Assembly: GCF_001194135.2 (NCBI RefSeq)
Contig: NC_068984.1
Span: forward strand, 119,108,285 to 119,172,284
Origin: Octopus bimaculoides
Lineage: Eukaryota
Reading direction: 5' to 3'
DNA: 64,000 nt
Of this stretch, positions 4,688 to 60,460 are shown piece after piece (position 1 is the first letter of the stretch; every line of letters begins with the position of its first letter). The translations under genes were made by a program, and so were the position numbers. The notes below the pieces were generated by a model. The model saw only the letters and a program-made list of their open reading frames with translations. It was not told the origin of the DNA and ran no database searches.

Positions 4688-7145
4688 TCGTCATCATCGT
4701 TTAATTTCCGCTTTCCATGCTGGCATAAGTTGGACAGTTTGACTGAGGACTGGCAAGCCAGGAGGCTGGACTAGGCTCCAATCTGATCTGGTAAAGTTTC
4801 TACAGCTGGATGCCTTTCCTAATGCCAATGACTCCGAGAGTGTAGCAGGTGCTTTTTACATTCCACCAGCATGGGGTCTAGTCAGGTGGCACTGGTATCA
4901 ACCATGCCCAAATGGTACATTTTACATGCCACCAGCATCGGAGGCAGTCAGGCAACACTGGTGTCAACCATGCTCGAATGGTGCTTTTTACGTGCCACCA
5001 GTACAGGAGCCAGTCAAGCAGCATTGGCATTGACCATGCTCAAATGGTGCTTTTTACATGCCACCAGCACGGGAGCCAGTCAGGCAGCACTGGCATCAGC
5101 CATGACTACAATTTCACTTGGCTCAACAGGTCTTCTCAAGCACAGCATATTGCCCAACGATTGAAGGGTACTTTTAAACAGGCCAGTTATGGGACACTGG
5201 CATTGACTATGGCTATTATCTCACTCGGCTTGCCAGGCCTTCTCACGCACAGCATATCTCCAAAGGTCTCAGTCACCTTTGTTAGGACCAACATTCAAAG
5301 GTCATGCTTCACGACCGCATCCTATGTCTTCCTGGGTCTACTTCTTCCTCAGGTTCCTTTCACTGTTAGGATGTGATACAGCTGTCTTCATCCATGCGCA
5401 ACACATGACCATACCAGTGCAGTCGTCTCTCTTGCACACCACATCTGATGTTTCTTGTGTCCAACTTTTCTCTCAGGGAACTTACACTTTGTCGTGTGTG
5501 CACACTGACATTACACATCCAGTGGAGCATACTAGCTTCATTTCTTTCAAGCCTACTCATGTCCTCAGCAGTCACAGCCCATGTTTCACTGCTGTGTAGC
5601 ATGGCTGTTCACACACATGCATCATACAGTCTGCCTTTCACTCTGAGTGAGAGGCCCTTTGTTACCAGCAGAGGTAGGAGCTCTCTGAACTTTGCTCAGG
5701 CTATTCTTATTCTAGGAGCTACGCTCTCAGAGCAACCACTGCCACTACTGACTTGGTCACCTAGGTAACAGAAGCTATCATCTACTTCTAGTTTTACCCC
5801 CTTGCATATGATGGAATCTGTTTTCTGTACATCTTCAGTGTTTATTGCCCCTGTGCATCTTCCACACACAATATCTATCTTCCCAGTTAGCCTTCCTTTG
5901 ATATTGCTGCACCTCTTATGTGTCCATAGCTTACACTAGGTACAACTTATAGATTTTCTACCTACGCCTTTTCTACAGATCGAGCAGGGCCATCTACCTG
6001 AAGGGATTTGTGATTTGTTTGCCTTCCTACTTGCTAAGACTTTGGTTTTTGCTAGATTGAATCTAAGGCCCTTCGATTCTAGACCTTGCTTCCACACCTG
6101 AAACTTTTCTAGTTCTGATAGTGACTCAGCTATGAGAGCAAGGTCATCAGCACAGAGGAGCTCCCAGGGGCATGCTGTCTTGAATTCCTCTGTTATTGCC
6201 TGAAGGACTATGATGAATATGAGGGGGCTAAGGACTGATCCTTGCTGGACCCCTAACTCTTAGCCAGAATTCTTCGCTATAATCATTGCCAACCCTCACC
6301 TTACTGACAGCATCCTTGTACATGGCTTGTACAGCACTCACCAACCACTCATCTATTCCTAGTTTCTGCATTGACCACCAGATAAAGGATCAGGGACTCT
6401 GTCAAAGGCTTTTCTCATGTCAACGAAAGCCATGTACAGAGGTTTATCTTTGACTAGGAATTTCTCTGAGGCTGTCTTACCAGAAATATAGCATTAGTGA
6501 TGCTTCTCCCTGGCACAAACCCAAACTGCATCTCGTCTAAACTAACTCTCTTCCTAATTAGTAGGGCTGTGACCCTCTCCATGACTTTCATCATCTGATC
6601 CAACAATTTGATACCTCTGTAATTATTCTTATCTAATGTGTCACCTTTACCTTTGTAGCAGTTAATTATGGTACTGCTACACCAGTCATTGGGTATGACT
6701 CCTTTACGTATCACCTGGTTGACTATATGGGTAACTAGATTATAGCCAACACTGGCAGATATTTTAAGCATCTCTGCAGTGATTCCTGATGGGCCAGGGG
6801 CTTTCCCTGCCTTCATACCCTTAATTGCTTTATCTACCAAGGTAGTGTCAATTCAAATAGTTGGTCAATCTGTTGGGTCGACATTTGGCAGACTCTCTCT
6901 CATTCATTCTCTTCATTTAGCAACCTTTCATAGTGACGTCTCCAAGTCTAGTCTCTCTCCTTGTTGCCTCATTAAATGCGAGTGAGCCATCATCCATGCA
7001 GACTCGTTTCTCTCCTATGACATCACAATTCTCTCTCAGACACTGCCTTGCAATACAAAACACTTCAAGTCTTTGGTCCTCCCAATGCAGAACAATGGCA
7101 AATTTTTTCTTATCTGCTTTGCCAGAGCAGCTGTCTGGCTTCCGT
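4688..7145 (-). mobile_element. 5'-truncated RTE-clade LINE (dead RT ORF, 3' UTR and (GAT)n tail)
   Basis: Fragments KAIKGMKAGKAPGPSGITAEMLK, KGKGD...NYRGIKLL, QFGFVPGRS, LLCADD, HSSETWAVT and LHWYGHVLRMDE, with stops and frameshifts. The tail abuts (TA)n at 4678-4688. Confidence 0.93.
4849..5108. repeat. 66-bp tandem repeat, 4 units, inside the RTE 3' UTR
   Basis: Units start at 4849, 4915, 4981 and 5047 (gtgctttttac.tgccaccagca...ccatgctc.aatg). Confidence 0.9.
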
Positions 7146-9724: not shown

Positions 9725-10468
9725 TACGGTCTCACTTGGCTTGCTGGTTCTTCTCAAGCACAGCATATCTCCAAAAGTCTCGGTCACTTGTAATCACCTC
9801 GGTGCGGCCCAACGTTCGAAGGTCGTGCTTCACCACCTCCTCCCAGATTTTCTTGGGTCTACCTCTTCCACAGGTTCCCTCTACTGCTAGAGTGTGACAC
9901 TTTTCACCCAGCTGTCCTCATCCATCCGCAACACATGATCATACCAGTGCAGTCGTCTCTCTTGCACACCACATCTGATGCTTCTTATGTCCAACTTTTC
10001 TCTCAGGGTGCTTACACTCTGTCATGTATGCACACTGACATTACACATCTGGCGGAGCATACTAGCTTCATTCCTTGGAAGCTTACACATGTCCTCAGCA
10101 GTTATGGCCCCTGTTTCACTGCCATGTAGCATGGCTGTTCGCACACATGCATCATACAGTCTACCTTTTACTCTGAGCGAGAGGCCCTTTGTCACCAGCA
10201 GAGATAGGAGCTCTCTGAACTTTGCTCAGGCTATTCTTATTCTGGCAGCTATACTCTCAGAGCAACCACCCCTGCTACTGGTCACCTAGGAAACAGAAAC
10301 TATCATCTGCTTCTAGTTTTTCCCCCTGGCATGTGACAGAGGCTGTTTTCTGCACAGGTTCAGTGTTCATTGCCCCTGAGCATTTGCCACACACAAAATC
10401 TGCCTTCCCAGTTAGCCTTCCTTTGATATTGCTGCACCTCTTATGTGTCCATAGCTTACACCAGGTAA
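9725..10468 (-). mobile_element. RTE LINE internal fragment (C-terminal ORF region)
   Basis: Close homolog of 5220-5940 (encodes ...HGSETGAIT..., RRLHWYDHVLRMDEDS). Confidence 0.9.
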
Positions 10469-11271
10469 AAACAGTAAAAAGCTTTTCTTTAATATTTTCT
10501 TTGATGCTAGAAATTCATATTCTGCACTTTCTATCTCTGCTGGAATACGTCCATGTCATGGAGAAAAGATTGAATGCATTCATTATCTATTTATTTATAG
10601 TAATACTTGCTGCAAAGATTTCTCTCCCTTAGACATCAACAGTGTCAGGCATCATAGAGCTGTGTGCTTTATTCATTAACACCAATCAAAATGTACAAAT
10701 ACATCAGACATATTATACAGGAAATTAGTGCAAAAGAAAAAACAAATTATTGATCTTGAAAGCTGTTTTCTTCTTTCTTTCCTTGTTTTTATTTGTTTTA
10801 TATTTGTTGGACTGATGACTACATGCACTGACATTCAGATCTTACTACTATCATTATATTTTTTTCTAAGCAAGGCACCTAACCCTCTTTTTTATTAATG
10901 GCTTAGTCAGAGGAGGAGGGGAAGCATCTATGACCTTTACAAGGCCTCTAAGACTGGGGTAGGGGAATTGAGGAAGAAGCCATGACTCATTGTTGCTGCA
11001 GTAAAATGTGATGCATTGAGTTACCAAGTGATTCTCTGACAGATGACCTGGTCCAGATACTTGTAACAAAAATGGATTCTACTAAAATGCACTCAGAGAT
11101 CAAGCAATAGTGTTAGATTGGAGAATGGATGAAGCTAAGTCAAACCATACAAGGACTGGTTCAGACTTGTAAGTTTCCATGTTGTTTCTATCCACCAAAT
11201 TCCATTTGCAAGGCTTGCATTAACCCGAGACTAAGGCTGAACATACTTGCCTGAGAAAACACTCAGTGGAA

Positions 11272-20462: not shown

Positions 20463-20542
20463 TCATACATACATACATACATACATACATACATACATAC
20501 ATACATACATGCATACATACATACATACATACGTACATACAT
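20463..20542. repeat. (ACAT)n microsatellite in the putative PAP 3' UTR
   Basis: Direct reading. One of many microsatellites; others include (CT)n 7853-7918, (TA)n 7548-7600 and 21680-21744, (ATT)n 38856-38911. Confidence 0.95.
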
Positions 20543-20608
20543 ATGTTTACTTGTAATAATGAAGGACAGTTAAAACAATGAATAAAGAGATATTTAATCT
20601 ACAATTCT

Positions 20609-20787
20609 TCAAGTTCGTGTAAGACGGAATTCATCCATCACAGCACTATTTTTACTTCTTATGTACTGAAAATGAAGAGCTTTTGGGAAAGCTTCCATGA
20701 TAACATGTCCAGTATCTTTGCCTTTAACGTAGAAAGCTCTCCATTTGGCTTTATTGTAGAAAGATTCATCATTTGGCTCAGGGTTAC
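20609..20787 (-). CDS. Purple acid phosphatase, terminal coding exon (GNPEPNDESFYNKAKWRAFYVKGKDTGHVIMEAFPKALHFQYIRSKNSAVMDEFRLTRT*)
   Basis: Minus-strand acceptor ttgttttacttccag| at 20788. Phase-1 splicing to 28284 rebuilds HLINGAGGNPE and a typical PAP C-terminal domain (W..., G, L+F+Y+, V+D+F+L). 179 nt, ending in TGA at 20611-20609, with no internal stop. Confidence 0.9.
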
Positions 20788-21676
20788 CTGGAAGTAAAAC
20801 AAGTAAATTATCATGAGACTGACTTGGTGTTAGTTATATTTCAGTCAGAGGAAACAAATAAGATCTCAAGCAAAAACATAAATAATAAACTTAAAAATAA
20901 AATCATTATAATTATAGAAAAGATAATTTAATTTTCATTGAAATCTAATAACTTGTCATTGACAGAAATATGTTTGTGCATACACATACACACTTAAAAA
21001 ACACACATTCACACAAACACATAGACACACATACACATGCACATATCCTGTATGTTGCATATGGCTAAGCTCATGGAGTACTGGACAAGCAGAAAGGCAA
21101 GATAGCTAAGGAATCTAGGAACATCCAGAAAGTTGCTCATTCTGCTAGAAACAGTAACCAAAACCTTGCCAAAATCTCACTAAAATCATGCCTATGTTTG
21201 CATATATATACATGCAGTTGTGTGTGTGTGTGTGTGTGTGTCTTTCTAGCATAGAGCAGGGATGACTATAGATCAAATGGGTACTCAGAATACATGTTGG
21301 GAAGAGTAGCAGTGTTTATTTGAAGCACAAGACCTTACAGAGTGCTCATCTGTTTCCTATTCATACGTGATTTGAGGAAGATATGCAGTAAAACAGGAAA
21401 CCTAAAGACAGTACATTACGCACTTAGATGGTCACCAGAATGCACAAACTCACAGACTAACAGGCATCTGCTGCTACATATGTACACATACACATTCTCT
21501 TACATATATATATGTACATACATGGATATGCATATATATATAGACACATACAAACATAGACATATGAGTCAAGTAATTGCTCAAGTTGACACCAGGCTCC
21601 AATCTAAATTTGGCAGAGTTTCTACAGCTGGATGCCCTTCCTAACACCAACCACTCATGTTTATATATATATACAT

Positions 21677-21748
<72 letters not shown>

Positions 21749-24700
21749 GTTTATATATATACACACACACACATAAATACATTACATATGTACAAACAAA
21801 TATAGTTACATAGGTAAGGAAGTAAACAGTTGAAAAACAGTTGTGGGCATAAGTATTTAAAAAGGTCAATACATAGGAATGCTTCTAAGTGTACTGGTGA
21901 AATGTCAAGAGAAGAATATAGAGACATATAACAAGAAACATAGGGGTGGCTGGAATTAATAAAATTAAAATTAAAAATGAAAGAAGAAAGAAGAGAGTAA
22001 TTGTGATCAGAAAAAAATAAAGAACTAGTTAAACGAAATGGGTTAACACAATAGAAATATAATTAAATTCTTCTCAAAAACAATAAAGAAAAACAACGAA
22101 TAAAAGTATTCAAAAATTGGTATTTTTAGGTTAATATGAAAATTGGGTGACCGGAAAGTGAGGTTCAAATGAAAAGAAGGGAAAAAGGTTAAATTGCTTT
22201 GAATGAGGTGGCAGCAAGGCTGATTTTAAGCCAATTAAATATATTTGTCTAAATTTGTCCCAGCGCCAAGAGAGGGCCCTGCACACATGCTGAAGTGGGG
22301 GATGCTAATATGGACTTTTAGCATTTTATTATGGTTAAAGGTGGAGCATGAAGCCCTCAATGCTTTTTGGTTGGGACTGGCATACTACACAAAGCATAAA
22401 ACATCAATGTTCAGCTTTTGTAGAGTAGAGGGCTCCACTGACAATTCTGTAATTAGGCCCCGCACTCCCTAGTGCTGGCCCTGCTTGGCAAGAACACATG
22501 AAACAAAGGCTGAATCAATCATTGTTCATTATTGAATGAAAATATGATTTATGTGCCTAAGCTACATAACCCTTTGCCTGTTCTTGGTGTCCATGTATAA
22601 CATATGATACACATTCCCAATTGTTTTCAACCGCCAGAGTAACTTACGATTTATGAAAGGCAAGCTTTATATTATTCAGAACATATGAAACAAAGACTGT
22701 CTGAAAGTCTGAAAACAAGCATGGATGTTTAGGATAAACTGATGAAAATGCTTTGGACAAGCAAAGGCTTAATTTGTAATAGGAGTTTTGGGCAAATTCA
22801 AAACACAAAGTTTCACTTCAGTGACCCACAATCACAGCACATATACAAGTTTGAAGGTCACTTTTTGAACTGATCTAGCAACACAAAAGATTACTTATTT
22901 GGTCTAGATAGGCCAATCATATAAGTCCACTTCACTCCTGTTCACTCTTCCATTTTATGAGTCATCTATCTTTCAACTGATAATTATAAAAGAGGGCAAA
23001 GATTGATCTTTTATTCGAGCAATCCCAAACCATTTTGCACCACAGACTGGTTTCAAGCAAGACAATTTTTCCACAATACAATACATATATATTACATATA
23101 TGTAAGTTACAGAGAAGGTCATAGCCCAACCAATTAGGGAGAGAGTTAGCCTAGATGAGATGCAGTTTGGTTTTGTGCCAGGTAGAAGCATCATGGGTGC
23201 TATATTTCTGGTAAGGCAACTGCAGGAGAAATATCTAGCCAAAGATAGACCTCTGCACTTGGCTTTTGTTGACCTGGAGAAAGCCTTTGACAGGGTCCCC
23301 TGATCTCTTATCTGGTGGTCAATGCGGAAACTGGGGATAGACAAGTGGTTGGTAAGAGCTGTACAAGCCCTGTAAAGGGATGCTGTCAGTAAGATGAGGG
23401 TTGGCAAAGAATATAGTGAAGAATTCCATGTAGAAGTAGGGGTTCACCAAGGATCAGCCCTCAGCCCCCTCTTGTTCATTATAGTCCTCCAGGTAATAAC
23501 AGGAATTCAAGACAGGCTACCCCTGGGAGCTCCTCTATGCTGATGACCTTGCTCTAATAGCTGAGTCACTGCCAGAACTAGAGACGAAGTTTAGGCTGTG
23601 GAGCAAGACCTAGAATCAAAGGGCCTTCGGATTAACCAAGCAAAAACTAAAATCTTAGTAAGTAGGAATGCTGTCAAATCACAAACCCCTTCAGGTAGAT
23701 GGCCCTGCTCGATCTGTAGAAAAGGCATGGGTAGAAACTCCATACGATGTACCCAGTGTAAACTATGGACACATAAAAGGTGCAGGAATATTATAGGAAG
23801 GTTAACCAGGAAGATAGTTTTTGTGTGTGGCAGATGCACAGGAGCAATAAACACTGAAGATGTACAGAAAACAGATTCCATCACATGCCAGGGGAAGATA
23901 CTAGAAGTAGTTAATAGCTTCTGCTACCTAAGCAACCAAGTCTGTAGTGGAGGTGGTCGCTCTGAGAGTGTAGGGGCTAGAATAAAAATAGCCTGGGCAA
24001 AGTTCAGGAAGCTCCGACCTCTGCTAGCAACTATGGGCCTCTCACTCAGGATGAAAGGTAGGCTGTATGATGCATGTGTGTGAACTGCCATGCTACACAG
24101 CAGTGAAACATGGGCCATGAATGCTGAGGACATGCGTAGGCTTGAAAGAAATGAAGCTAGTGTGATCCACTGGATGTGTAATATCAGTGTGCATACACGA
24201 CAGAGTGTAAATGCCTTCAGAGAAAAGTTGGGCGTGAGAAGTATGAAATGTGGTGTGCAAGAGAGATGACTGTGCTGGTATGGTCATGTGCTACATATGG
24301 ATGAGGTCAGCTGTGTGAGGAAATGCATGTCCAGCCCAGTTAAGTGCACCCCTGATGCATCAGGCGATATGGTATGCTTGAGGAGACCTGTTGAGTCAAG
24401 TAAAACCAATATTGTAGCTGTGGCCAGTGCTCCCTGACTGGCTCCTGTGCCAATGACATGTAAAATGCACCATCCAAACGTGGTCAATGCCAGGTCCGCC
24501 TGACTGGCTTCTCTGCCAGTGGCACATAAAAAGCACCCACTACACCGTCCAACCCATGCTAGCATGGAAAACAAACGTTAAACGATGTTGATGATGATGA
24601 TGATGATGATGATGATAAGGAATGAGTGCACGTACTAGGTTTGGTGGCAAGCAATAAGTGAAGGCATGCTACATACACATGCCAAGGTAGAGAGAAAAAG

Positions 24701-27700
24701 TTGATGGAGGAGGAGNNNNNNNNNNNNNNNNNNNNNNNNNNNNNNNNNNNNNNNNNNNNNNNNNNNNNNNNNNNNNNNNNNNNNNNNNNNNNNNNNNNNN
24801 NNNNNNNNNNNNNNNNNNNNNNNNNNNNNNNNNNNNNNNNNNNNNNNNNNNNNNNNNNNNNNNNNNNNNNNNNNNNNNNNNNNNNNNNNNNNNNNNNNNN
24901 NNNNNNNNNNNNNNNNNNNNNNNNNNNNNNNNNNNNNNNNNNNNNNNNNNNNNNNNNNNNNNNNNNNNNNNNNNNNNNNNNNNATATATGTGATGTAGCC
25001 CACTGGATGGTGAGGCATGCCTCTTGCAGCCTGCCTGGCAAAATAGTTGCCCATGCCTGACCTAGAAAGTCAAACCACAAACAAAAAAAATAATCCCAGT
25101 ATGAAATGAAAATTAACATCAATGAAAAAAATACTTACTATAGCTTTCTTCTTACTTTTAAGTTCTTGAAGATCTTGCTCTAGAGAAAAAGAGATCAAAG
25201 AAAATTAGAAGAGAATGATAAGTAAAACAAATACCAGTCACGTTTCAAAGGAGTTTTATTATGAATTTTTATTTTAGGCTATATATTTAATAAAAAGCAT
25301 TTAGTGATGTTTCCTGTATCGCTAAAATACATTGTTTCACAAACGATTGAAAAATGTAAATACCACAACAGAAACATTCCCACAGAACTGGAATTAATTA
25401 TGTATATTATTTACTGCTATAAATCACATAATTATTATTTCATGAAAACTATCTAATGCACATAGCAGTAAATGAAAAGCAAAGGTCTTCTAATAAAAAT
25501 AACATCTTTATATTACAGAAGGAAAAAAAATTTTTTATTCTTAATTACTAAATATTTATCCACTGAGTTATCTATGAGATTCAAAGCTATTTATTCACAG
25601 GCTGTAACACATGTGTTACACTCTTCCGAGTGTCAACAAGCTCTCGCATAACTTGCATGTCTTAATGAACGAAATTCCTTTTTCTTTTCCAACAGCATAT
25701 CAATTGACTAATTAACAAAAATCTAACTAGTCTTTTATTTCAGTTTAACTAGAAAGAAATATTTTCATTTCTAAGCATATGGATTAAATAACTTATTGAA
25801 TTATATCAAAAGTAAAAACACTTTAAAAAAAAAATGATTGAGAAATCCTATTTTTAAATACACCTTGAGAATAAAAAGCAAGTATGATTAAACCATTTTT
25901 ATTGACTTTGTTCAGCAGGAAGTGGTAAGATTCTCGGATTTTAAGAAAGAAGAAAATAGTTATCGTAAAAGTTAAGATGTAAATAGTCACACCTTTCCAA
26001 TTTTTATGGTAATTATTNNNNNNNNNNNNNNNNNNNNNNNNNNNNNNNNNNNNNNNNNNNNNNNNNNNNNNNNNNNNNNNNNNNNNNNNNNNNNNNNNNN
26101 NNNNNNNNNNNNNNNNNNNNNNNNNNNNNNNNNNNNNNNNNNNNNNNNNNNNNNNNNNNNNNNNNNNNNNNNNNNNNNNNNNNNNNNNNNNNNNNNNNNN
26201 NNNNNNNNNNNNNNNNNNNNNNNNNNNNNNNNNNNNNNNNNNNNNNNNNNNNNNNNNNNNNNNNNNNNNNNNNNNNNNNNNNNNNNNNNNNNNNNNNNNN
26301 NNNNNNNNNNNNNNNNNNNNNNNNNNNNNNNNNNNNNNNNNNNNNNNNNNNNNNNNNNNNNNNNNNNNNNNNNNNNNNNNNNNNNNNNNNNNNNNNNNNN
26401 NNNNNNTCTCTAGCTCAATAAGTACCAAGAAGAACTGCTGGTTTTAGTTAAGAATTTCTCATGCATTTAACTCATGCAAATGTGATATCTGTGATCCTTT
26501 ATCAATGTAGCAATCCAAACTGTATCTTATCCAATCTAACACTAGTGGGTGCATTTATCACAGCATTAGGAAGACTGCCTTGTCCTATGAAGAAGTCTTC
26601 TCTATGTTGTCAGTGTTCATTCATAACATGTCCATGAGGGAAACAGAAGAAAAAGTAATGAAAGTTAGAGTGATGGAGAATGAAGAGAAAGAGAAATTGA
26701 ATTGACAGTTATATGCTGATTGTTGGTAAGGAGATTGAATAGAAAACAGCATGTGTAATGCAGTAGGGTAGAAGGAGAGACAGGAAAGAAACAATGTGAT
26801 GGAAGGAGGAATGAAAATGGGAAAGAGAATGGGGAATGACAACAATGGGTATTAGAGGAAGAAGTAATATGAGATTGAGCAATGGACAGCAATAAAGATG
26901 GGTGATGGTAAAAGAGAAGGAGTGACAGATGTCAATCACTAATAGGGGAGGGAATAATGGGAAACAGGAGATATACACATTACCAAGTGCCTTAAAGAAA
27001 TGCACAAATACAATATTCTGAACAGTAGTGTTGACCTGTCTTTGTGGAAGTTATTTTGGTTCCATTGTAAGATTGGATTAATATGAGGGGAAACTGAGGA
27101 GCACTGACTTATAAATGTTTGAGACTAGAAGTGAGTGTAATTATGCTATAGTTCTGGGATCAGTGAAAATTACCTGTCTTTAAAAGTAGAATAACTGAAA
27201 CTGTGAATGAAGGGCAGATTGCATGAAGTATGATATCATCAAGTGATGTGTGCAGGGGTAAGCCATGGGTGCTGAACATAGAGGATACACAAATGTTGAA
27301 ATGACATAAGGCAAGCATATCTCATAAGATATGTAATATCAGCATGCATGAATGTAGTTGCATACAAATATCAAGTGCATACGNNNNNNNNNNNNNNNNN
27401 NNNNNNNNNNNNNNNNNNNNNNNNNNNNNNNNNNNNNNNNNNNNNNNNNNNNNNNNNNNNNNNNNNNNNNNNNNNNNNNNNNNNNNNNNNNNNNNNNNNN
27501 NNNNNNNNNNNNNNNNNNNNNNNNNNNNNNNNNNNNNNNNNNNNNNNNNNNNNNNNNNNNNNNNNNNNNNNNNNNNNNNNNNNNNNNNNNNNNNNNNNNN
27601 NNNNNNNNNNNNNNNNNNNNNNNNNNNNNNNNNNNNNNNNNNNNNNNNNNNNNNNNNNNNNNNNNNNNNNNNNNNNNNNNNNNNNNNNNNNNNNNNNNNN

Positions 27701-28180
27701 NNNNNNNNNNNNNNNNNNNNNNNNNNNNNNNNNNNNNNNNNNNNNNNNNNNNNNNNNNNNNNNNNNNNNNNNNNNNNNNNNNNNNNNNNNNNNNNNNNNN
27801 NNNNNNNNNNNNNNNNNNNNNNNNNNNNNNNNNNNNNNNNNNNNNNNNNNNNNNNNNNNNNNNNNNNNNNNNNNNNNNNNNNNNNNNNNNNNNNNNNNNN
27901 NNNNNNNNNNNNNNNNNNNNNNNNNNNNNNNNNNNNNNNNNNNNNNNNNNNNNNNNNNNNNNNNNNNNNNNNNNNNNNNNNNNNNNNNNNNNNNNNNNNN
28001 NNNNNNNNNNNNTATATATATATATATATACACACACAATGGGCTTCTACACAGTTTTTATCAACAAAATTCATTCACAACATATTAACTGGCCCAGGGC
28101 TAAAGTATGTTCCGAACAGTGGGGTTTAACCCCAAACTATATAGTTGCAACAAAACCAACTTCATAGTCACATACCCAGT

Positions 28181-28215
<35 letters not shown>

Positions 28216-28283
28216 ATGGCTCTCAAATCATAAATAATTTCTTTATATAAATTGAAGCATTATAAAGAGTTTTACTTTCTTAC
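20788..28283 (-). other. PAP intron (7496 bp, phase 1, GT-AG)
   Basis: GTAAGA donor at 28283 and CAG acceptor at 20790-20788. Contains an antisense RTE LINE, microsatellites and three assembly gaps. Confidence 0.85.
23107..24615 (+). mobile_element. 5'-truncated RTE LINE, antisense inside the PAP intron
   Basis: QFGFVPGRS, AFVDLEKAFDRVP, GVHQGSALSPLLF, ELLYADD, CSICRKG...CTQC...HKRC and WYGHVL, with in-frame stops. Shortened 3' UTR and (GAT)n tail at 24590-24615. Confidence 0.93.
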
Positions 28284-29529
28284 CTCCAGCTCCATTAATT
28301 AAATGTACTGGTGCCTTTGGATTATGGTAATTCCAGCTACTAACCACATTGTTTGCAACAGGATAACTTCTTTCATAATGGTGTACATGACCACTCACAT
28401 AAACATCAACATTTTTTTGTACTAGAAGATTTTCCAATGCAGCTCTGAGCTTTGTAGAGAGAGATTTGCAACTTATATTTGCATTGTGCGAGCTACAATA
28501 CAAAGGCCGATGTGCAAGGGCAATAACCCAGGGTACTTTGTCTCTGTTTAAATTAGCTTTGTTCAGATCATTTTCAAGCCACTGATATTGTATTGAACTT
28601 TGGTTTACGTCATGCTCAGTGGAAAACATACTGAAGTGAACACCCATATAATCGAAAGAATACCAGAATGGAGAGTCAGAGTCACTTTCCAAGTAGGGCA
28701 TCCGAAACCAGTTTAGATAAGCACCAAAGTTAAACTGAACTTCATGATTTCCTGGTAAAACCATATATGGAATTCTACTCGTTATTCTTTTTATTTTATT
28801 CATATATTCTGTCCATATATACGAATTGTTTCCTTCTCGTTTGCTGAAATTGTCTGCATAGCTGATGTCGCCAATATGTATAAGAATCTTCATTTCTAAA
28901 GAACGAGTAAAATTCCAAATTGATTCAATTGTTTCATCGCTATTTGTGACACCAAGGTCACCAACAATTCCAATCAAATTACGCTTCTCTGATTTGCTAT
29001 TTACACTGCTAATGTATGAATTTTCTGACTTTGAGATTGTGCAACTATTTACTTCTTTTGGAGTTAGCATATTTGGTTTTTGTAAACTAAAACTTTGGAT
29101 TGTGCTCCAGCCGTAAGCAGGATCACCACAGACGTAGTAAACAATATCGTATATGTTTTCAAATTTCTCTAATTTTAACACAGCTCTATTTAATGTTAAC
29201 TGAAACATTCCAGCTGTATATGTGTATGATTTTCCTTGTACTTTACTGGGCGTTTCAGAATGAATATTGCCATAGAGACATGCTGGAGAAAATGAATTAT
29301 TTATAAAAGGAACAGGAGTCAGCCATATTGCAAGTATTTCGTTGTGCCCTTTTAGTGCTAAGTGCAATCCTTGAACTGGTTCTGAACTTAAAATAATTGG
29401 TTCCTTCAAAGGATTAACAACTTTAGGTGACATGTCTGCAAATATTCTGTTTAGTTCCTCGTTATCAGAAACAAACGTAGTATAACACACAGACCAAAAT
29501 AAGCTTACAATGCCAAGTGATAATAACAT
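28284..29529 (-). CDS. Purple acid phosphatase (Fe/Zn or Fe/Mn metallophosphoesterase, secreted), coding exon 1 (415 codons + 1 nt)
   Basis: Open frame with all five PAP motif blocks in order: GDLG, GDISY, GNHE, ALAH(RPLY), GHVH. N-terminal QGLHLAL...AIWLT and YYVCGDPAYGWS match the PAP N-terminal (FN3-like) domain. First ATG at 29529 gives the signal-peptide-like MLLSLGIVSLFWSVCYT; the ORF track start at 29550 is TTG. Exon bounded by a pyrimidine tract + AG acceptor (exon starts 29551) and an AG|GTAAGA donor after 28284. Confidence 0.95.
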
Positions 29530-30504
29530 TTTTCTATAACTGACTTCCAATCTTGAAAATAAAGGAAAAACATAGAATTAGACATCTATATATAATGGGC
29601 AATACAAAAATATTTATTCATTTCTAATCCATAACAAATATTTAAATTTTAGTAGTAATAATATGCGCTGAAAAATTATTCTTTCAATTGTTACAATTAT
29701 ATGTGAAATAAATTCAATATTTTTATTTCAAGATTATATATATGTTGCAATTAAATTTCTGATGTGTCAAATAGGTGTACACATGCGATTTATAAAGAAA
29801 TATGAGTCTCAAAATAAGCAAATGTTCAAAAGCTACAGCCAACTTTGGAGCCTGTATATGGTTATTTATACCTGTTATATTTCTCTTTACATTAAATACA
29901 GCATGGAATCTAAAAATCAAAAATACGAAAGCTTATACAAATGTTTAAGAACATATGTTGGGATTTTGAAAATACCTCAAGGAGTGACAACCATATCTAG
30001 TATAGTTACAGGTTGCCCTTTGGCAAGGCATAGCACATATTCAGCCACCCAGCCAGGGATACAGCAAAGTCATGGAACTGCAGCATGGTAGATAATGAAT
30101 AGGTAGTGGAAGAGCTCAACTGAGCCAATGGTGATTCTTACATTGATACTGAGGAGAAGAATCCTAGAAGATCAAGTCAGGAATGCCAAGCTCTCTATCA
30201 AGAGAGTAACTGCCATGCATTGATAAGAGTGGCATCCATGATTGTGCAATCAGCTAATGAAAGATTCACTATAACTCAAGCTCCCAATTCAATTTCATAA
30301 TAATGGAATTGGATGGTAACAGAGAGTCATGGGAATCCACAAAAGCAGCATAACTGAAGACAGAAAGAACATATGCAGTCTTGCTGATTTTGGATATAGT
30401 TCTCAGCAAATATTAAAGGATGTCAAGATACAACATACACAATTCTTATATCACTTACCAGTTTCCATATTACTCCTCCATTTTGCTGAGAAAACAATAG
30501 CTTA

Positions 30505-59880: not shown

Positions 59881-60460
59881 GGTATATATACATACATATG
59901 TATGTATATATATATGTATATATATATATANNNNNNNNNNNNNNNNNNNNNNNNNNNNNNNNNNNNNNNNNNNNNNNNNNNNNNNNNNNNNNNNNNNNNN
60001 NNNNNNNNNNNNNNNNNNNNNNNNNNNNNNNNNNNNNNNNNNNNNNNNNNNNNNNNNNNNNNNNNNNNNNNNNNNNNNNNNNNNNNNNNNNNNNNNNNNN
60101 NNNNNNNNNNNNNNNNNNNNNNNNNNNNNNNNNNNNNNNNNNNNNNNNNNNNNNNNNNNNNNNNNNNNNNNNNNNNNNNNNNNNNNNNNNNNNNNNNNNN
60201 NNNNNNNNNNNNNNNNNNNNNNNNNNNNNNNNNNNNNNNNNNNNNNNNNNNNNNNNNNNNNNNNNNNNNNNNNNNNNNNNNNNNNNNNNNNNNNNNNNNN
60301 NNNNNNNNNNNNNNNNNNNNNNNNNNNNNNNNNNNNNNNNNNNNNNNNNNNNNNNNNNNNNNNNNNNNNNNNNNNNNNNNNNNNNNNNNNNNNNNNNNNN
60401 NNNNNNNNNNNNNNNNNNNNNNNNNNNNNNNNNNNNNNNNNNNNNNNNNNNNNNNNNNNN

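What the first reader, a model, noticed from the sequence alone, without database searches (positions are those of the whole stretch)
20609..29551. Complete two-coding-exon purple acid phosphatase; the real C-terminus lies 7.5 kb from where the ORF track ends
Seen: the 435-aa ORF runs past a perfect AG|GTAAGA donor into intron, so KKVKLFIMLQFI is spurious. A 179-nt exon at 20609-20787 with a strong acceptor splices in phase 1 and rebuilds INGAGGNPE...WRAFY...GHVIME...LHFQYIRS...VMDEFRLTRT*. The product is 474 aa with a signal peptide, six N-glycosylation sequons in exon 1 (NNS, NFT, NFS, NNS, NQS, NIS) and all seven PAP ligands (D; D,Y; N; H; H,H). Established: these ligands define binuclear PAPs. 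Inference: an active secreted or lysosomal phosphatase.
Basis: partly seen in the sequence, partly recalled or inferred. Interest (0 to 1): 0.7.

Follow-up and report, generated by a model that had tools for sequence, protein, structure and literature searches.

The report
Octopus purple acid phosphatase gene, already annotated

Summary
Confirmed and ordinary. On the minus strand, 29529..28284 joins 20787..20609 through a GT donor (28283-2) and an AG acceptor (20789-8). The intron is phase 1 and 7,496 nt long. The product is 474 aa with six N-X-S/T sequons.

This exact sequence is already public as XP_014778228.2, "acid phosphatase type 7 [Octopus bimaculoides]" (UniRef A0A0L8GTN8).

- **Domains:** Pfam gives Metallophos (71.7 bits) and Metallophos_C (45.3 bits). 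Exon 2 alone scores 26.5 bits against a cut-off of 23. The N-terminal PAP domain is below cut-off by sequence, but an AlphaFold model supports it (pLDDT 87, full-length Foldseek match to kidney-bean PAP).
- **Active site:** all seven metal ligands (D191, D221, Y224, N261, H340, H381, H383) align to kidney-bean PAP and are invariant in 35 homologues.
- **Gaps:** the three assembly gaps all lie inside the intron. The gap-free O. vulgaris locus is colinear across them, keeps both splice sites and holds no extra coding exon.
- **Intron age:** the same intron position and phase occur in Haliotis and in the hemichordate Ptychodera.
- **Selection:** dN/dS against O. vulgaris is 0.087.

Caveats: a 5' non-coding exon probably lies about 30 kb upstream in another gap (59931-60460). 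The 7.5 kb intron length is an estimate. Secretion and enzyme activity are inferred, not shown.

The parts
28284..29529 (-). Coding exon 1 (1,246 nt; residues 1-415 plus the first base of the Gly416 codon), from ATG 29529 to the last exon base 28284
   Evidence: tblastn of the spliced protein gives 100% identity over 29529-28282. Identical to XP_014778228.2.
29530..29551 (-). 5' untranslated start of this exon. It is preceded by a polypyrimidine tract and an AG acceptor at 29553-29552, which implies an upstream exon.
   Evidence: Sequence. The O. vulgaris model CAI9722265.1 splices a 5' exon onto exactly this acceptor (TTTTCAAG|ATTGGAAGTC).
29479..29529 (-). N-terminal hydrophobic segment MLLSLGIVSLFWSVCYT, a putative signal peptide (residues 1-17)
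   Evidence: Kyte-Doolittle 11-residue means are 1.6-2.4 over residues 1-7 and fall below 0 by residue 14. This stretch has low pLDDT and a helix at 7-17 in the model. Orthologues also start with a hydrophobic segment. No SignalP was run.
29089..29373 (-). N-terminal beta-sandwich domain (residues 53-147), Pur_ac_phosph_N-like
   Evidence: Pfam 21.1 bits, below the cut-off of 30. The AlphaFold model shows beta strands with pLDDT above 90. Foldseek matches full-length two-domain plant PAPs, TM-score 0.79-0.81 normalised to kidney-bean PAP.
28375..28974 (-). Metallophos catalytic domain (residues 186-385). It holds the ligand codons D191 (28959-7), D221 (28869-7), Y224 (28860-58), N261 (28749-7), H340 (28512-0), H381 (28389-7) and H383 (28383-1).
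   Evidence: Pfam PF00149, 71.7 bits. Motif-by-motif alignment to kidney-bean PAP 2qfp. All seven ligands are invariant in 35 homologues. Coordinates.
20788..28283 (-). Phase-1 intron of 7,496 nt as assembled, GT at 28283-2 and AG at 20789-8. It contains the three assembly gaps (1,286 N).
   Evidence: Both splice sites are conserved in O. vulgaris. The same position and phase occur in Haliotis asinina and Ptychodera flava.
24716..28012 (.). Block holding all three gaps (24716-24983, 26018-26406, 27384-28012) and two sequence islands (24984-26017, 26407-27383). It has no counterpart in O. vulgaris.
   Evidence: Window 28018 aligns to L001 49840 and window 24715 to L001 50040, about 200 b apart in O. 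vulgaris. The islands match nothing else in L001 or in the window.
20609..20787 (-). Coding exon 2 (179 nt; rest of Gly416, residues 417-474, stop TGA 20611-20609). It encodes most of Metallophos_C.
   Evidence: Alone it scores 26.5 bits against PF14008 (cut-off 23). In the spliced protein PF14008 is matched end to end (profile positions 1-63, residues 406-468) at 45.3 bits. Alignments to 34 homologues have no indel at the junction.
23595..24283 (+). Transposon debris inside the intron, antisense to the gene: an ORF with a PHD-like zinc finger, typical of the C-terminal part of a retroelement polyprotein
   Evidence: ORFs. Pfam PHD 23.9 bits, just under the cut-off of 24. Related copies lie at about 4832-5765 and 9794-10629.
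59931..60460 (-). Assembly gap where the 5' (probably non-coding) exon of the gene is expected
   Evidence: The O. vulgaris 5' exon is L001 10001-10119. L001 9682 aligns to window 60491 and L001 10274 to window 59930, so the exon's place is the gap.

Best explanation
This is the Octopus bimaculoides gene for a two-domain ('plant-type', about 55 kDa) purple acid phosphatase of the ACP7-like group. It is already annotated as XP_014778228.2.

The coding sequence sits in two exons on the minus strand (29529-28284 and 20787-20609). An old phase-1 intron of about 7.5 kb separates them and has collected repeats and assembly gaps. A 5' non-coding exon probably lies about 30 kb upstream.

Inferred mechanism:
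1. The N-terminal hydrophobic segment takes the protein into the ER, where some of the six sequons are glycosylated.
2. The Metallophos domain binds an Fe(III)-M(II) pair through D191, D221 (bridging), Y224 and H383 on the Fe site, and D221, N261, H340 and H381 on the M(II) site.
3. A metal-bound hydroxide hydrolyses phosphate monoesters or anhydrides at acid pH.

Shown here: the gene structure, domain content, ligand conservation, fold, purifying selection and identity to the annotated protein. Inferred: secretion or lysosomal location, metal content, activity and substrate.
For: - The exact 474-aa sequence is in NCBI and UniRef as acid phosphatase type 7 / purple acid phosphatase of O. bimaculoides. 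474-aa orthologous models exist in O. sinensis, and a 473-aa one in Argonauta hians.
- Pfam: Metallophos 71.7 bits and Metallophos_C 45.3 bits.
- The best PDB sequence matches are plant PAPs, E 2e-31 to 1e-26, with all five motifs aligned (GDLG, GDISYAD, GNHE, AHRP, GHVHHYERS).
- The seven ligands plus H262 are invariant in 35 homologues.
- AlphaFold model: pLDDT 87.1, pTM 0.86. Foldseek top hits are wheat purple acid phytase, lupin PPD1 and kidney-bean and sweet-potato PAPs at E 1e-34 to 1e-29. Mammalian 35-kDa ACP5 matches only the catalytic half.
- Splice sites are conserved in O. vulgaris, and dN/dS is 0.087 (30 synonymous against 11 non-synonymous changes).
- The intron position and phase are identical in Haliotis and Ptychodera.
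- The gap-free O. vulgaris intron contains no further PAP-coding segment.
Against: - No transcript evidence was examined here. The Logan contigs encoding P0003 and P0100 read through the donor into the intron, as unspliced or genomic sequence would.
- Pur_ac_phosph_N is below Pfam's cut-off.
- The second-sphere His295/His296 loop of kidney-bean PAP is replaced by a Cys-flanked loop (YCSSHNANISC). The only His there (H348) is two positions from the His296 column and is not conserved in the clade. PMC2267794 treats His296 as conserved among the PAPs it compared. Catalytic detail and substrate are therefore uncertain.
- The O. vulgaris annotation starts 47 residues further upstream, which would bury the hydrophobic segment.
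Confidence: 0.93

Rival explanations
1. The protein starts further upstream, as in the 521-aa O. vulgaris model or the withdrawn 548-aa O. bimaculoides model. The hydrophobic segment would then be internal (a signal anchor, or none), and the product would not be a simply secreted enzyme.
For: CAI9722265.1 carries a 47-residue in-frame extension from a 5' exon. The reading frame in the window stays open from the acceptor at 29551 to the ATG. The corresponding exon in this assembly is hidden in a gap.
Against: The current RefSeq models of O. bimaculoides and O. sinensis, and the Argonauta model, all start at the MLLSLG/MLSVG methionine. The extension is low-complexity (QQQQ, LLLL, SSLSL) and has no counterpart in Argonauta, Haliotis or Patella. 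The ATG has an A at -3.
Confidence: 0.08
2. The gene is a decaying or catalytically dead PAP-like copy rather than an active enzyme.
For: No His296 equivalent at the aligned position. No expression data were seen here.
Against: dN/dS is 0.087 against O. vulgaris, and the frame is intact in the four octopod gene models seen (O. bimaculoides, O. vulgaris, O. sinensis, Argonauta hians). All seven ligands and H262 are intact. Lupin PPD1 (3zk4), named as an enzyme in its PDB entry, also shows no His pair in this loop of its alignment to the query.
Confidence: 0.05
3. A coding exon is hidden in one of the three intron gaps, or the scaffold is misjoined, so that the two exons do not belong to one transcript.
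For: 1,286 unread bases lie in the intron. The 3.3-kb block that holds them has no O. vulgaris counterpart.
Against: The O. vulgaris locus has no N and is colinear on both sides, with the same two coding exons and no third PAP-like segment. Alignments to 34 homologues and to kidney-bean PAP run through the junction without an indel. Ptychodera has the same two-coding-exon layout.
Confidence: 0.02

Closest known systems
XP_014778228.2 / UniRef100_A0A0L8GTN8, acid phosphatase type 7 (purple acid phosphatase) of Octopus bimaculoides
   Same: Identical 474-aa sequence from first to last residue, so it is the same gene and the same exon join.
   Different: Nothing in the protein.
Octopod orthologues: O. 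sinensis XP_036357617.1 (474 aa), O. vulgaris CAI9722265.1 (521 aa), Argonauta hians 'probable purple acid phosphatase 20' (473 aa)
   Same: 98% identity (O. vulgaris, O. sinensis) and 84% (Argonauta) over the full length, with the same C-terminal exon.
   Different: The O. vulgaris model has a 47-aa N-terminal extension from a 5' exon 38 kb upstream. Its intron is 8,274 nt rather than 7,496 nt.
Plant two-domain purple acid phosphatases with solved structures: red kidney bean PAP (1kbp, 2qfp, 4dhl), sweet potato PAP (1xzw), wheat purple acid phytase (6gja), lupin PPD1 (3zk4)
   Same: Same two-domain fold: an N-terminal beta sandwich plus a Metallophos domain with a C-terminal extension. Same five motifs and seven ligands.
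   Different: Only 22-23% identity in the structural alignments. A disordered, Ser-rich linker (residues about 150-184, pLDDT below 50) is present. A Cys-flanked loop replaces the His295/His296 loop. Metal content and substrate are unknown.
Human ACP7 (PAPL), the 'plant-like' human PAP of Flanagan et al. 2006 (cited as ref. B47 in PMC2267794)
   Same: NCBI names the octopus protein and its mollusc, hemichordate and sponge relatives after it. It is a two-domain animal PAP.
   Different: Orthology to vertebrate ACP7 was not tested here. No vertebrate sequence appeared among the 96 hits, which may reflect that search's word filter.
Mammalian ACP5 / TRAP (1ute, 1war, 1qfc)
   Same: Same catalytic core. 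The seven metal ligands are conserved between animal and plant PAPs according to PMC2267794.
   Different: A single-domain 35-kDa enzyme. It covers only the catalytic half of the octopus model (TM-score 0.42-0.44 normalised to the query).

Membership tests
Purple acid phosphatase (binuclear metallohydrolase) | Seven invariant metal ligands in the motifs GDXG, GDXXY, GNH(D/E), VXXH and GHXH (kidney-bean PAP D135, D164, Y167, N201, H286, H323, H325) | tested here: met
   D191, D221, Y224, N261, H340, H381 and H383 align motif by motif to kidney-bean PAP chain 2qfp. All are invariant columns in 35 homologues. PMC2267794 states that the seven ligands are invariant.
Purple acid phosphatase (binuclear metallohydrolase) | Calcineurin-like phosphoesterase (Metallophos, PF00149) domain above the gathering score | tested here: met
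   71.7 bits against a cut-off of 21.5, residues 186-385.
Two-domain (plant-type / ACP7-like) PAP | C-terminal Metallophos_C (PF14008) domain | tested here: met
   45.3 bits against a cut-off of 23, profile positions 1-63 of 63, across the exon junction. Exon 2 alone scores 26.5 bits.
Two-domain (plant-type / ACP7-like) PAP | N-terminal Pur_ac_phosph_N (PF16656) domain by sequence | tested here: inconclusive
   21.1 bits, E 4.7e-4, below the gathering score of 30. Several orthologues also lack a precomputed PF16656 hit.
Two-domain (plant-type / ACP7-like) PAP | N-terminal beta-sandwich domain packed on the catalytic domain (fold) | tested here: met
   AlphaFold model has beta strands at residues 53-147 with pLDDT above 90. 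Foldseek aligns about 460 columns to the 424-residue kidney-bean PAP, TM-score 0.79-0.81 normalised to the target. This rests on a prediction, not a solved structure.
Kidney-bean PAP / ACP5-type active site | Second-sphere histidines (kidney-bean PAP His202 and His296) that bind substrate | tested here: inconclusive
   H262 (the His202 equivalent) is invariant. At the His296 column the query has A350. H348 lies two residues upstream in a loop that is variable in the clade (YC...C). The loop alignment is uncertain, and the model's coordinates could not be inspected.
Purple acid phosphatase (biochemical definition) | Fe(III)-M(II) centre with Tyr-to-Fe charge transfer (purple colour) and tartrate-resistant acid phosphatase activity | not testable with these tools
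   Needs purified protein.
Secretory-pathway protein | Cleavable N-terminal signal peptide | tested here: inconclusive
   A hydrophobic stretch spans residues 1-13 and is conserved in kind in orthologues. The n-region has no basic residue, no dedicated predictor was available, and the start codon depends on an unseen 5' exon.
Annotated gene 'acid phosphatase type 7' of O. bimaculoides | Same protein sequence as the public record | tested here: met
   The exact-sequence look-up finds XP_014778228.2 / A0A0L8GTN8.
Vertebrate ACP7 orthologue | Reciprocal best match or phylogenetic grouping with vertebrate ACP7 | not tested
   No vertebrate sequence was retrieved. The name is NCBI's.

The most novel reading that the evidence does not exclude
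The mollusc-hemichordate-sponge PAP clade to which this gene belongs replaces the His295/His296 substrate-binding loop of classical PAPs with a Cys-flanked loop. In octopods that loop has a His and an N-glycosylation sequon (YCSSHNANISC). The clade might therefore have a substrate range or mechanism distinct from the characterised plant and mammalian enzymes, for example nucleotide-diphosphate or phytate hydrolysis. No animal two-domain PAP has a solved structure among the hits seen here.
Probability: 0.15. Interest if true: 0.25.

Novelty: already known. Interest (0 to 1): 0.1.

Why it matters
It matters little beyond quality control. It shows that a reader working from raw sequence can recover a correct splice across 7.5 kb and three gaps. 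It also shows that bacterial-style ORF tracks mis-end eukaryotic genes.

The small additions made here are:
- The last intron of this PAP lineage is shared by Octopus, Haliotis and Ptychodera, so by inference it predates the protostome-deuterostome split.
- The gene's 5' exon is hidden in an assembly gap.
- The 47-aa N-terminal extension in the O. vulgaris annotation is probably an artefact.

Animal two-domain PAPs are biochemically little studied, so the enzyme itself could be of modest interest to metalloenzyme specialists.

Tried and rejected
- **Second PAP copy or alternative terminal exon:** tblastn of the spliced protein on all six frames of the window found only the two exons. The other hits had E above 1.
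- **Coding exon hidden in the intron gaps:** rejected. The gap-free O. vulgaris locus shows the same two coding exons plus one 5' exon, and homologue alignments have no indel at the junction.
- **O. vulgaris 5' exon in the window:** not found. Its flanks bracket the gap 59931-60460.
- **Origin of the two sequence islands between the gaps:** no match in L001 or elsewhere in the window, so it is unresolved whether they are a species-specific insertion or misplaced contigs.
- **Other genes or RNAs in the window:** only transposon debris was found. There were no Rfam families at gathering score and no tRNAs.
- **Literature search for ACP7 or PAPL in molluscs:** only incidental mentions in transcriptome papers. 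None was read beyond its abstract.
Full report
**1. What is in the sequence**

The region was read on the minus strand. The mechanical ORF list holds a 435-aa ORF at 28243..29550 (-). It starts at a TTG and ends ...INGAGGKKVKLFIMLQFI. The first ATG is at 29529 (AGAAAAATGT).

The donor is GGAGCTGGAG|GTAAGAAAG, with the last exon base at 28284. The acceptor is TTGTTTTACTTCCAG|GTAACCCTGAG, with the first exon base at 20787. The stop TGA is at 20611-20609.

Joining 29529-28284 (1,246 nt) to 20787-20609 (179 nt) gives 1,425 nt in frame and a 474-aa product ending VMDEFRLTRT*. Gly416 is split after its first base, so the intron is phase 1. Six N-X-S/T sequons are present (N77, N206, N227, N234, N309, N351), all in exon 1.

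**2. The gap test**

The three N runs (24716-24983, 26018-26406, 27384-28012) lie wholly inside the 7,496-nt intron. No reading frame has to be carried across them. The remaining questions were whether the two sides belong together and whether a coding exon could be hidden.

The orthologous O. vulgaris locus was fetched as L001 (68,057 b, no N). It carries the same two coding exons, separated by an 8,274-nt intron with the same GGAG|GTAAGAAA donor and TTTCCAG|GTAACCC acceptor. tblastn finds no third PAP-like segment in that intron.

blastn shows that the window and L001 are colinear, in the same order and orientation, on both sides of the gaps:
- window 29931-28018 aligns to L001 47954-49840;
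- window 24715-23875 aligns to L001 50040-51033;
- window 22491-21710 aligns to L001 53437-54209;
- window 21241-20464 aligns to L001 57067-58204.

The stretch 28018-24715 contains all three gaps and two sequence islands. It corresponds to only about 200 b in O. vulgaris, and the islands match nothing else in L001 or in the window. It is either an O. bimaculoides-specific insertion or misplaced contigs. Either way it is intronic, so "7.5 kb" is an estimate.

**3. What it is**

An exact-sequence look-up shows that the 474-aa product is already public. It is XP_014778228.2, "acid phosphatase type 7 [Octopus bimaculoides]", and UniRef100_A0A0L8GTN8, "Purple acid phosphatase". Its 90% cluster also holds O. 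sinensis XP_036357617.1 (474 aa) and O. vulgaris CAI9722265.1 (521 aa).

Further relatives are Argonauta hians (84% identity) and then gastropods, hemichordates and a sponge at 38-46%. Next come unnamed metagenome and protist-transcriptome sequences, followed by oomycete and fungal PAPs.

Pfam gives:
- Metallophos, 71.7 bits (residues 186-385);
- Metallophos_C, 45.3 bits (residues 406-468, profile positions 1-63 of 63, spanning the junction);
- Pur_ac_phosph_N, 21.1 bits, below its cut-off of 30.

Exon 2 alone scores 26.5 bits for Metallophos_C against a cut-off of 23.

**4. Active site and fold**

phmmer against PDB sequences finds only plant-type PAPs at E 2e-31 to 7e-26, including wheat purple acid phytase, kidney-bean PAP, sweet-potato PAP and lupin PPD1.

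The residue-level alignment to kidney-bean PAP pairs the motifs as follows:
- GDLG with GDLG;
- GDISYAD with GDLSYAD;
- GNHE with GNHE;
- ALAHRPLY with VLMHSPLY;
- GHVHHYERS with GHVHAYERS.

It runs through the exon junction (INGAGG|NPEPND against ITIGDAGNYGVID) without a gap. In a 35-sequence alignment, D191, D221, Y224, N261, H262, H340, H381 and H383 are invariant. PMC2267794 states that the seven ligands are invariant between plant and animal PAPs.

An AlphaFold model built on that alignment has mean pLDDT 87.1 and pTM 0.86. It shows a confident beta-sandwich at residues 53-147. Segments of pLDDT below 50 cover residues 1-3, 16-22, 24-38 and 161-175, and the ten-residue block means are 46-51 over residues 1-40 and 47-49 over residues 161-180.

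Foldseek against the PDB returns the two-domain plant PAPs over the whole length (E 8.5e-34 to 3e-29, TM-score 0.79-0.81 normalised to kidney-bean PAP). The 35-kDa mammalian ACP5 enzymes match only the catalytic half. This settles the N-terminal domain that the HMM left open.

One difference deserves note. The loop that carries His295/His296 in kidney-bean PAP is here YCSSHNANISC. The aligned position of His296 is A350, and H348 is two residues away. The wider clade has a variable Cys-flanked loop without a conserved His. Lupin PPD1, named diphosphonucleotide phosphatase 1 in its PDB entry, also shows no His pair in this loop of its alignment to the query. So this does not argue for inactivity, but it makes substrate and catalytic detail uncertain.

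**5. Gene-structure context**

The phase-1 intron in the Gly codon before NPE is at exactly the same place in two other species:
- Haliotis asinina: GCTGCCG|GTACGT ... TTTCAG|GGAACCCGGAA;
- Ptychodera flava: GCTGCAG|GTAATA ... TTTCAG|GAAATCCGGAA.

Ptychodera has the same two-coding-exon layout. Haliotis has one extra intron. The intron is therefore old and is not a peculiarity of this assembly.

Upstream, exon 1 is preceded by a polypyrimidine tract and an AG at 29553-2. In O. vulgaris a 5' exon 38 kb upstream (L001 10001-10119) is spliced onto that acceptor. The window is colinear with L001 through that large intron, and the exon's expected place falls in the gap 59931-60460. "Complete" therefore applies to the coding sequence only.

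The 47-residue N-terminal extension in the O. vulgaris model is low-complexity and is absent from the O. sinensis, O. bimaculoides and Argonauta models. I read it as a 5'UTR that happens to be open.

**6. Is it a working gene?**

Against O. vulgaris there are 30 synonymous and 11 non-synonymous differences (dS 0.112, dN 0.0098, dN/dS 0.087). The frame is intact in four octopod gene models. This indicates purifying selection.

No transcript evidence was available. The short Logan contigs encoding P0003 and P0100 read through the donor into the intron (GGK...), as genomic or unspliced sequence would.

The N-terminus MLLSLGIVSLFWSVCYT is hydrophobic and orthologues share that character. No signal-peptide predictor was run, so secretion or lysosomal targeting and glycosylation remain inferences.

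**7. Surroundings**

No other credible gene lies in the 64 kb. There are only retroelement fragments: an RT-like ORF at 6457-6852 (-), and a PHD-like zinc-finger ORF at 23595-24080 (+) inside the intron with related copies near 5 kb and 10 kb. Microsatellites are also present. There are no Rfam or tRNA hits.

**8. Verdict**

The feature is an ordinary gene that is already annotated. Novelty: already known. Interest is low.

Noticed in passing
window 24716-28012: A 3.3-kb block inside the PAP intron holds all three gaps and two sequence islands (24984-26017, 26407-27383). It has no counterpart at this site in the gap-free O. vulgaris locus (about 200 b there) and no other copy in the window. 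It is either a lineage-specific insertion or misplaced contigs.
   Followed up: partly
window 59931-60460 (gap); L001 10001-10119: The 5' exon used by the O. vulgaris model maps into an assembly gap of the window. The first intron of the gene is therefore about 30 kb here (38 kb in O. vulgaris).
   Followed up: partly
L001 10001-10119 (O. vulgaris CAI9722265.1): The O. vulgaris annotation adds a low-complexity 47-aa N-terminal extension that the other octopod models lack. It is probably a 5'UTR read as coding. An earlier O. bimaculoides model (XP_014778228.1, 548 aa) had a different extension.
   Followed up: partly
window 23595-24283 (+), 4832-5765, 9794-10629, 6457-6852 (-): Retroelement debris. 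A PHD-like zinc-finger ORF lies antisense inside the PAP intron, with related copies at two other places. An RT-like ORF is also present (RVT_1 19.8 bits, below cut-off).
   Followed up: partly
L002 (Haliotis asinina) about 7755/9001; L003 (Ptychodera flava) 4210/5893: The last intron of this PAP lineage has an identical position and phase (phase 1, in the Gly codon before NPE) in a cephalopod, a gastropod and a hemichordate. Ptychodera shares the two-coding-exon layout.
   Followed up: yes
window 28465-28497 (-), residues 345-355: The animal clade has a Cys-flanked loop (HRPLYC...xRC) where kidney-bean PAP has His295/His296. In octopods the loop reads YCSSHNANISC, with a sequon in place of the usual (E/D/S)RC.
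   Followed up: partly
window 20464-20543 and L001 58197-60231: A (CATA)n / (TATG)n microsatellite lies just downstream of the stop codon. It has 20 copies in the window but is expanded to about 2 kb in O. vulgaris.
   Followed up: no
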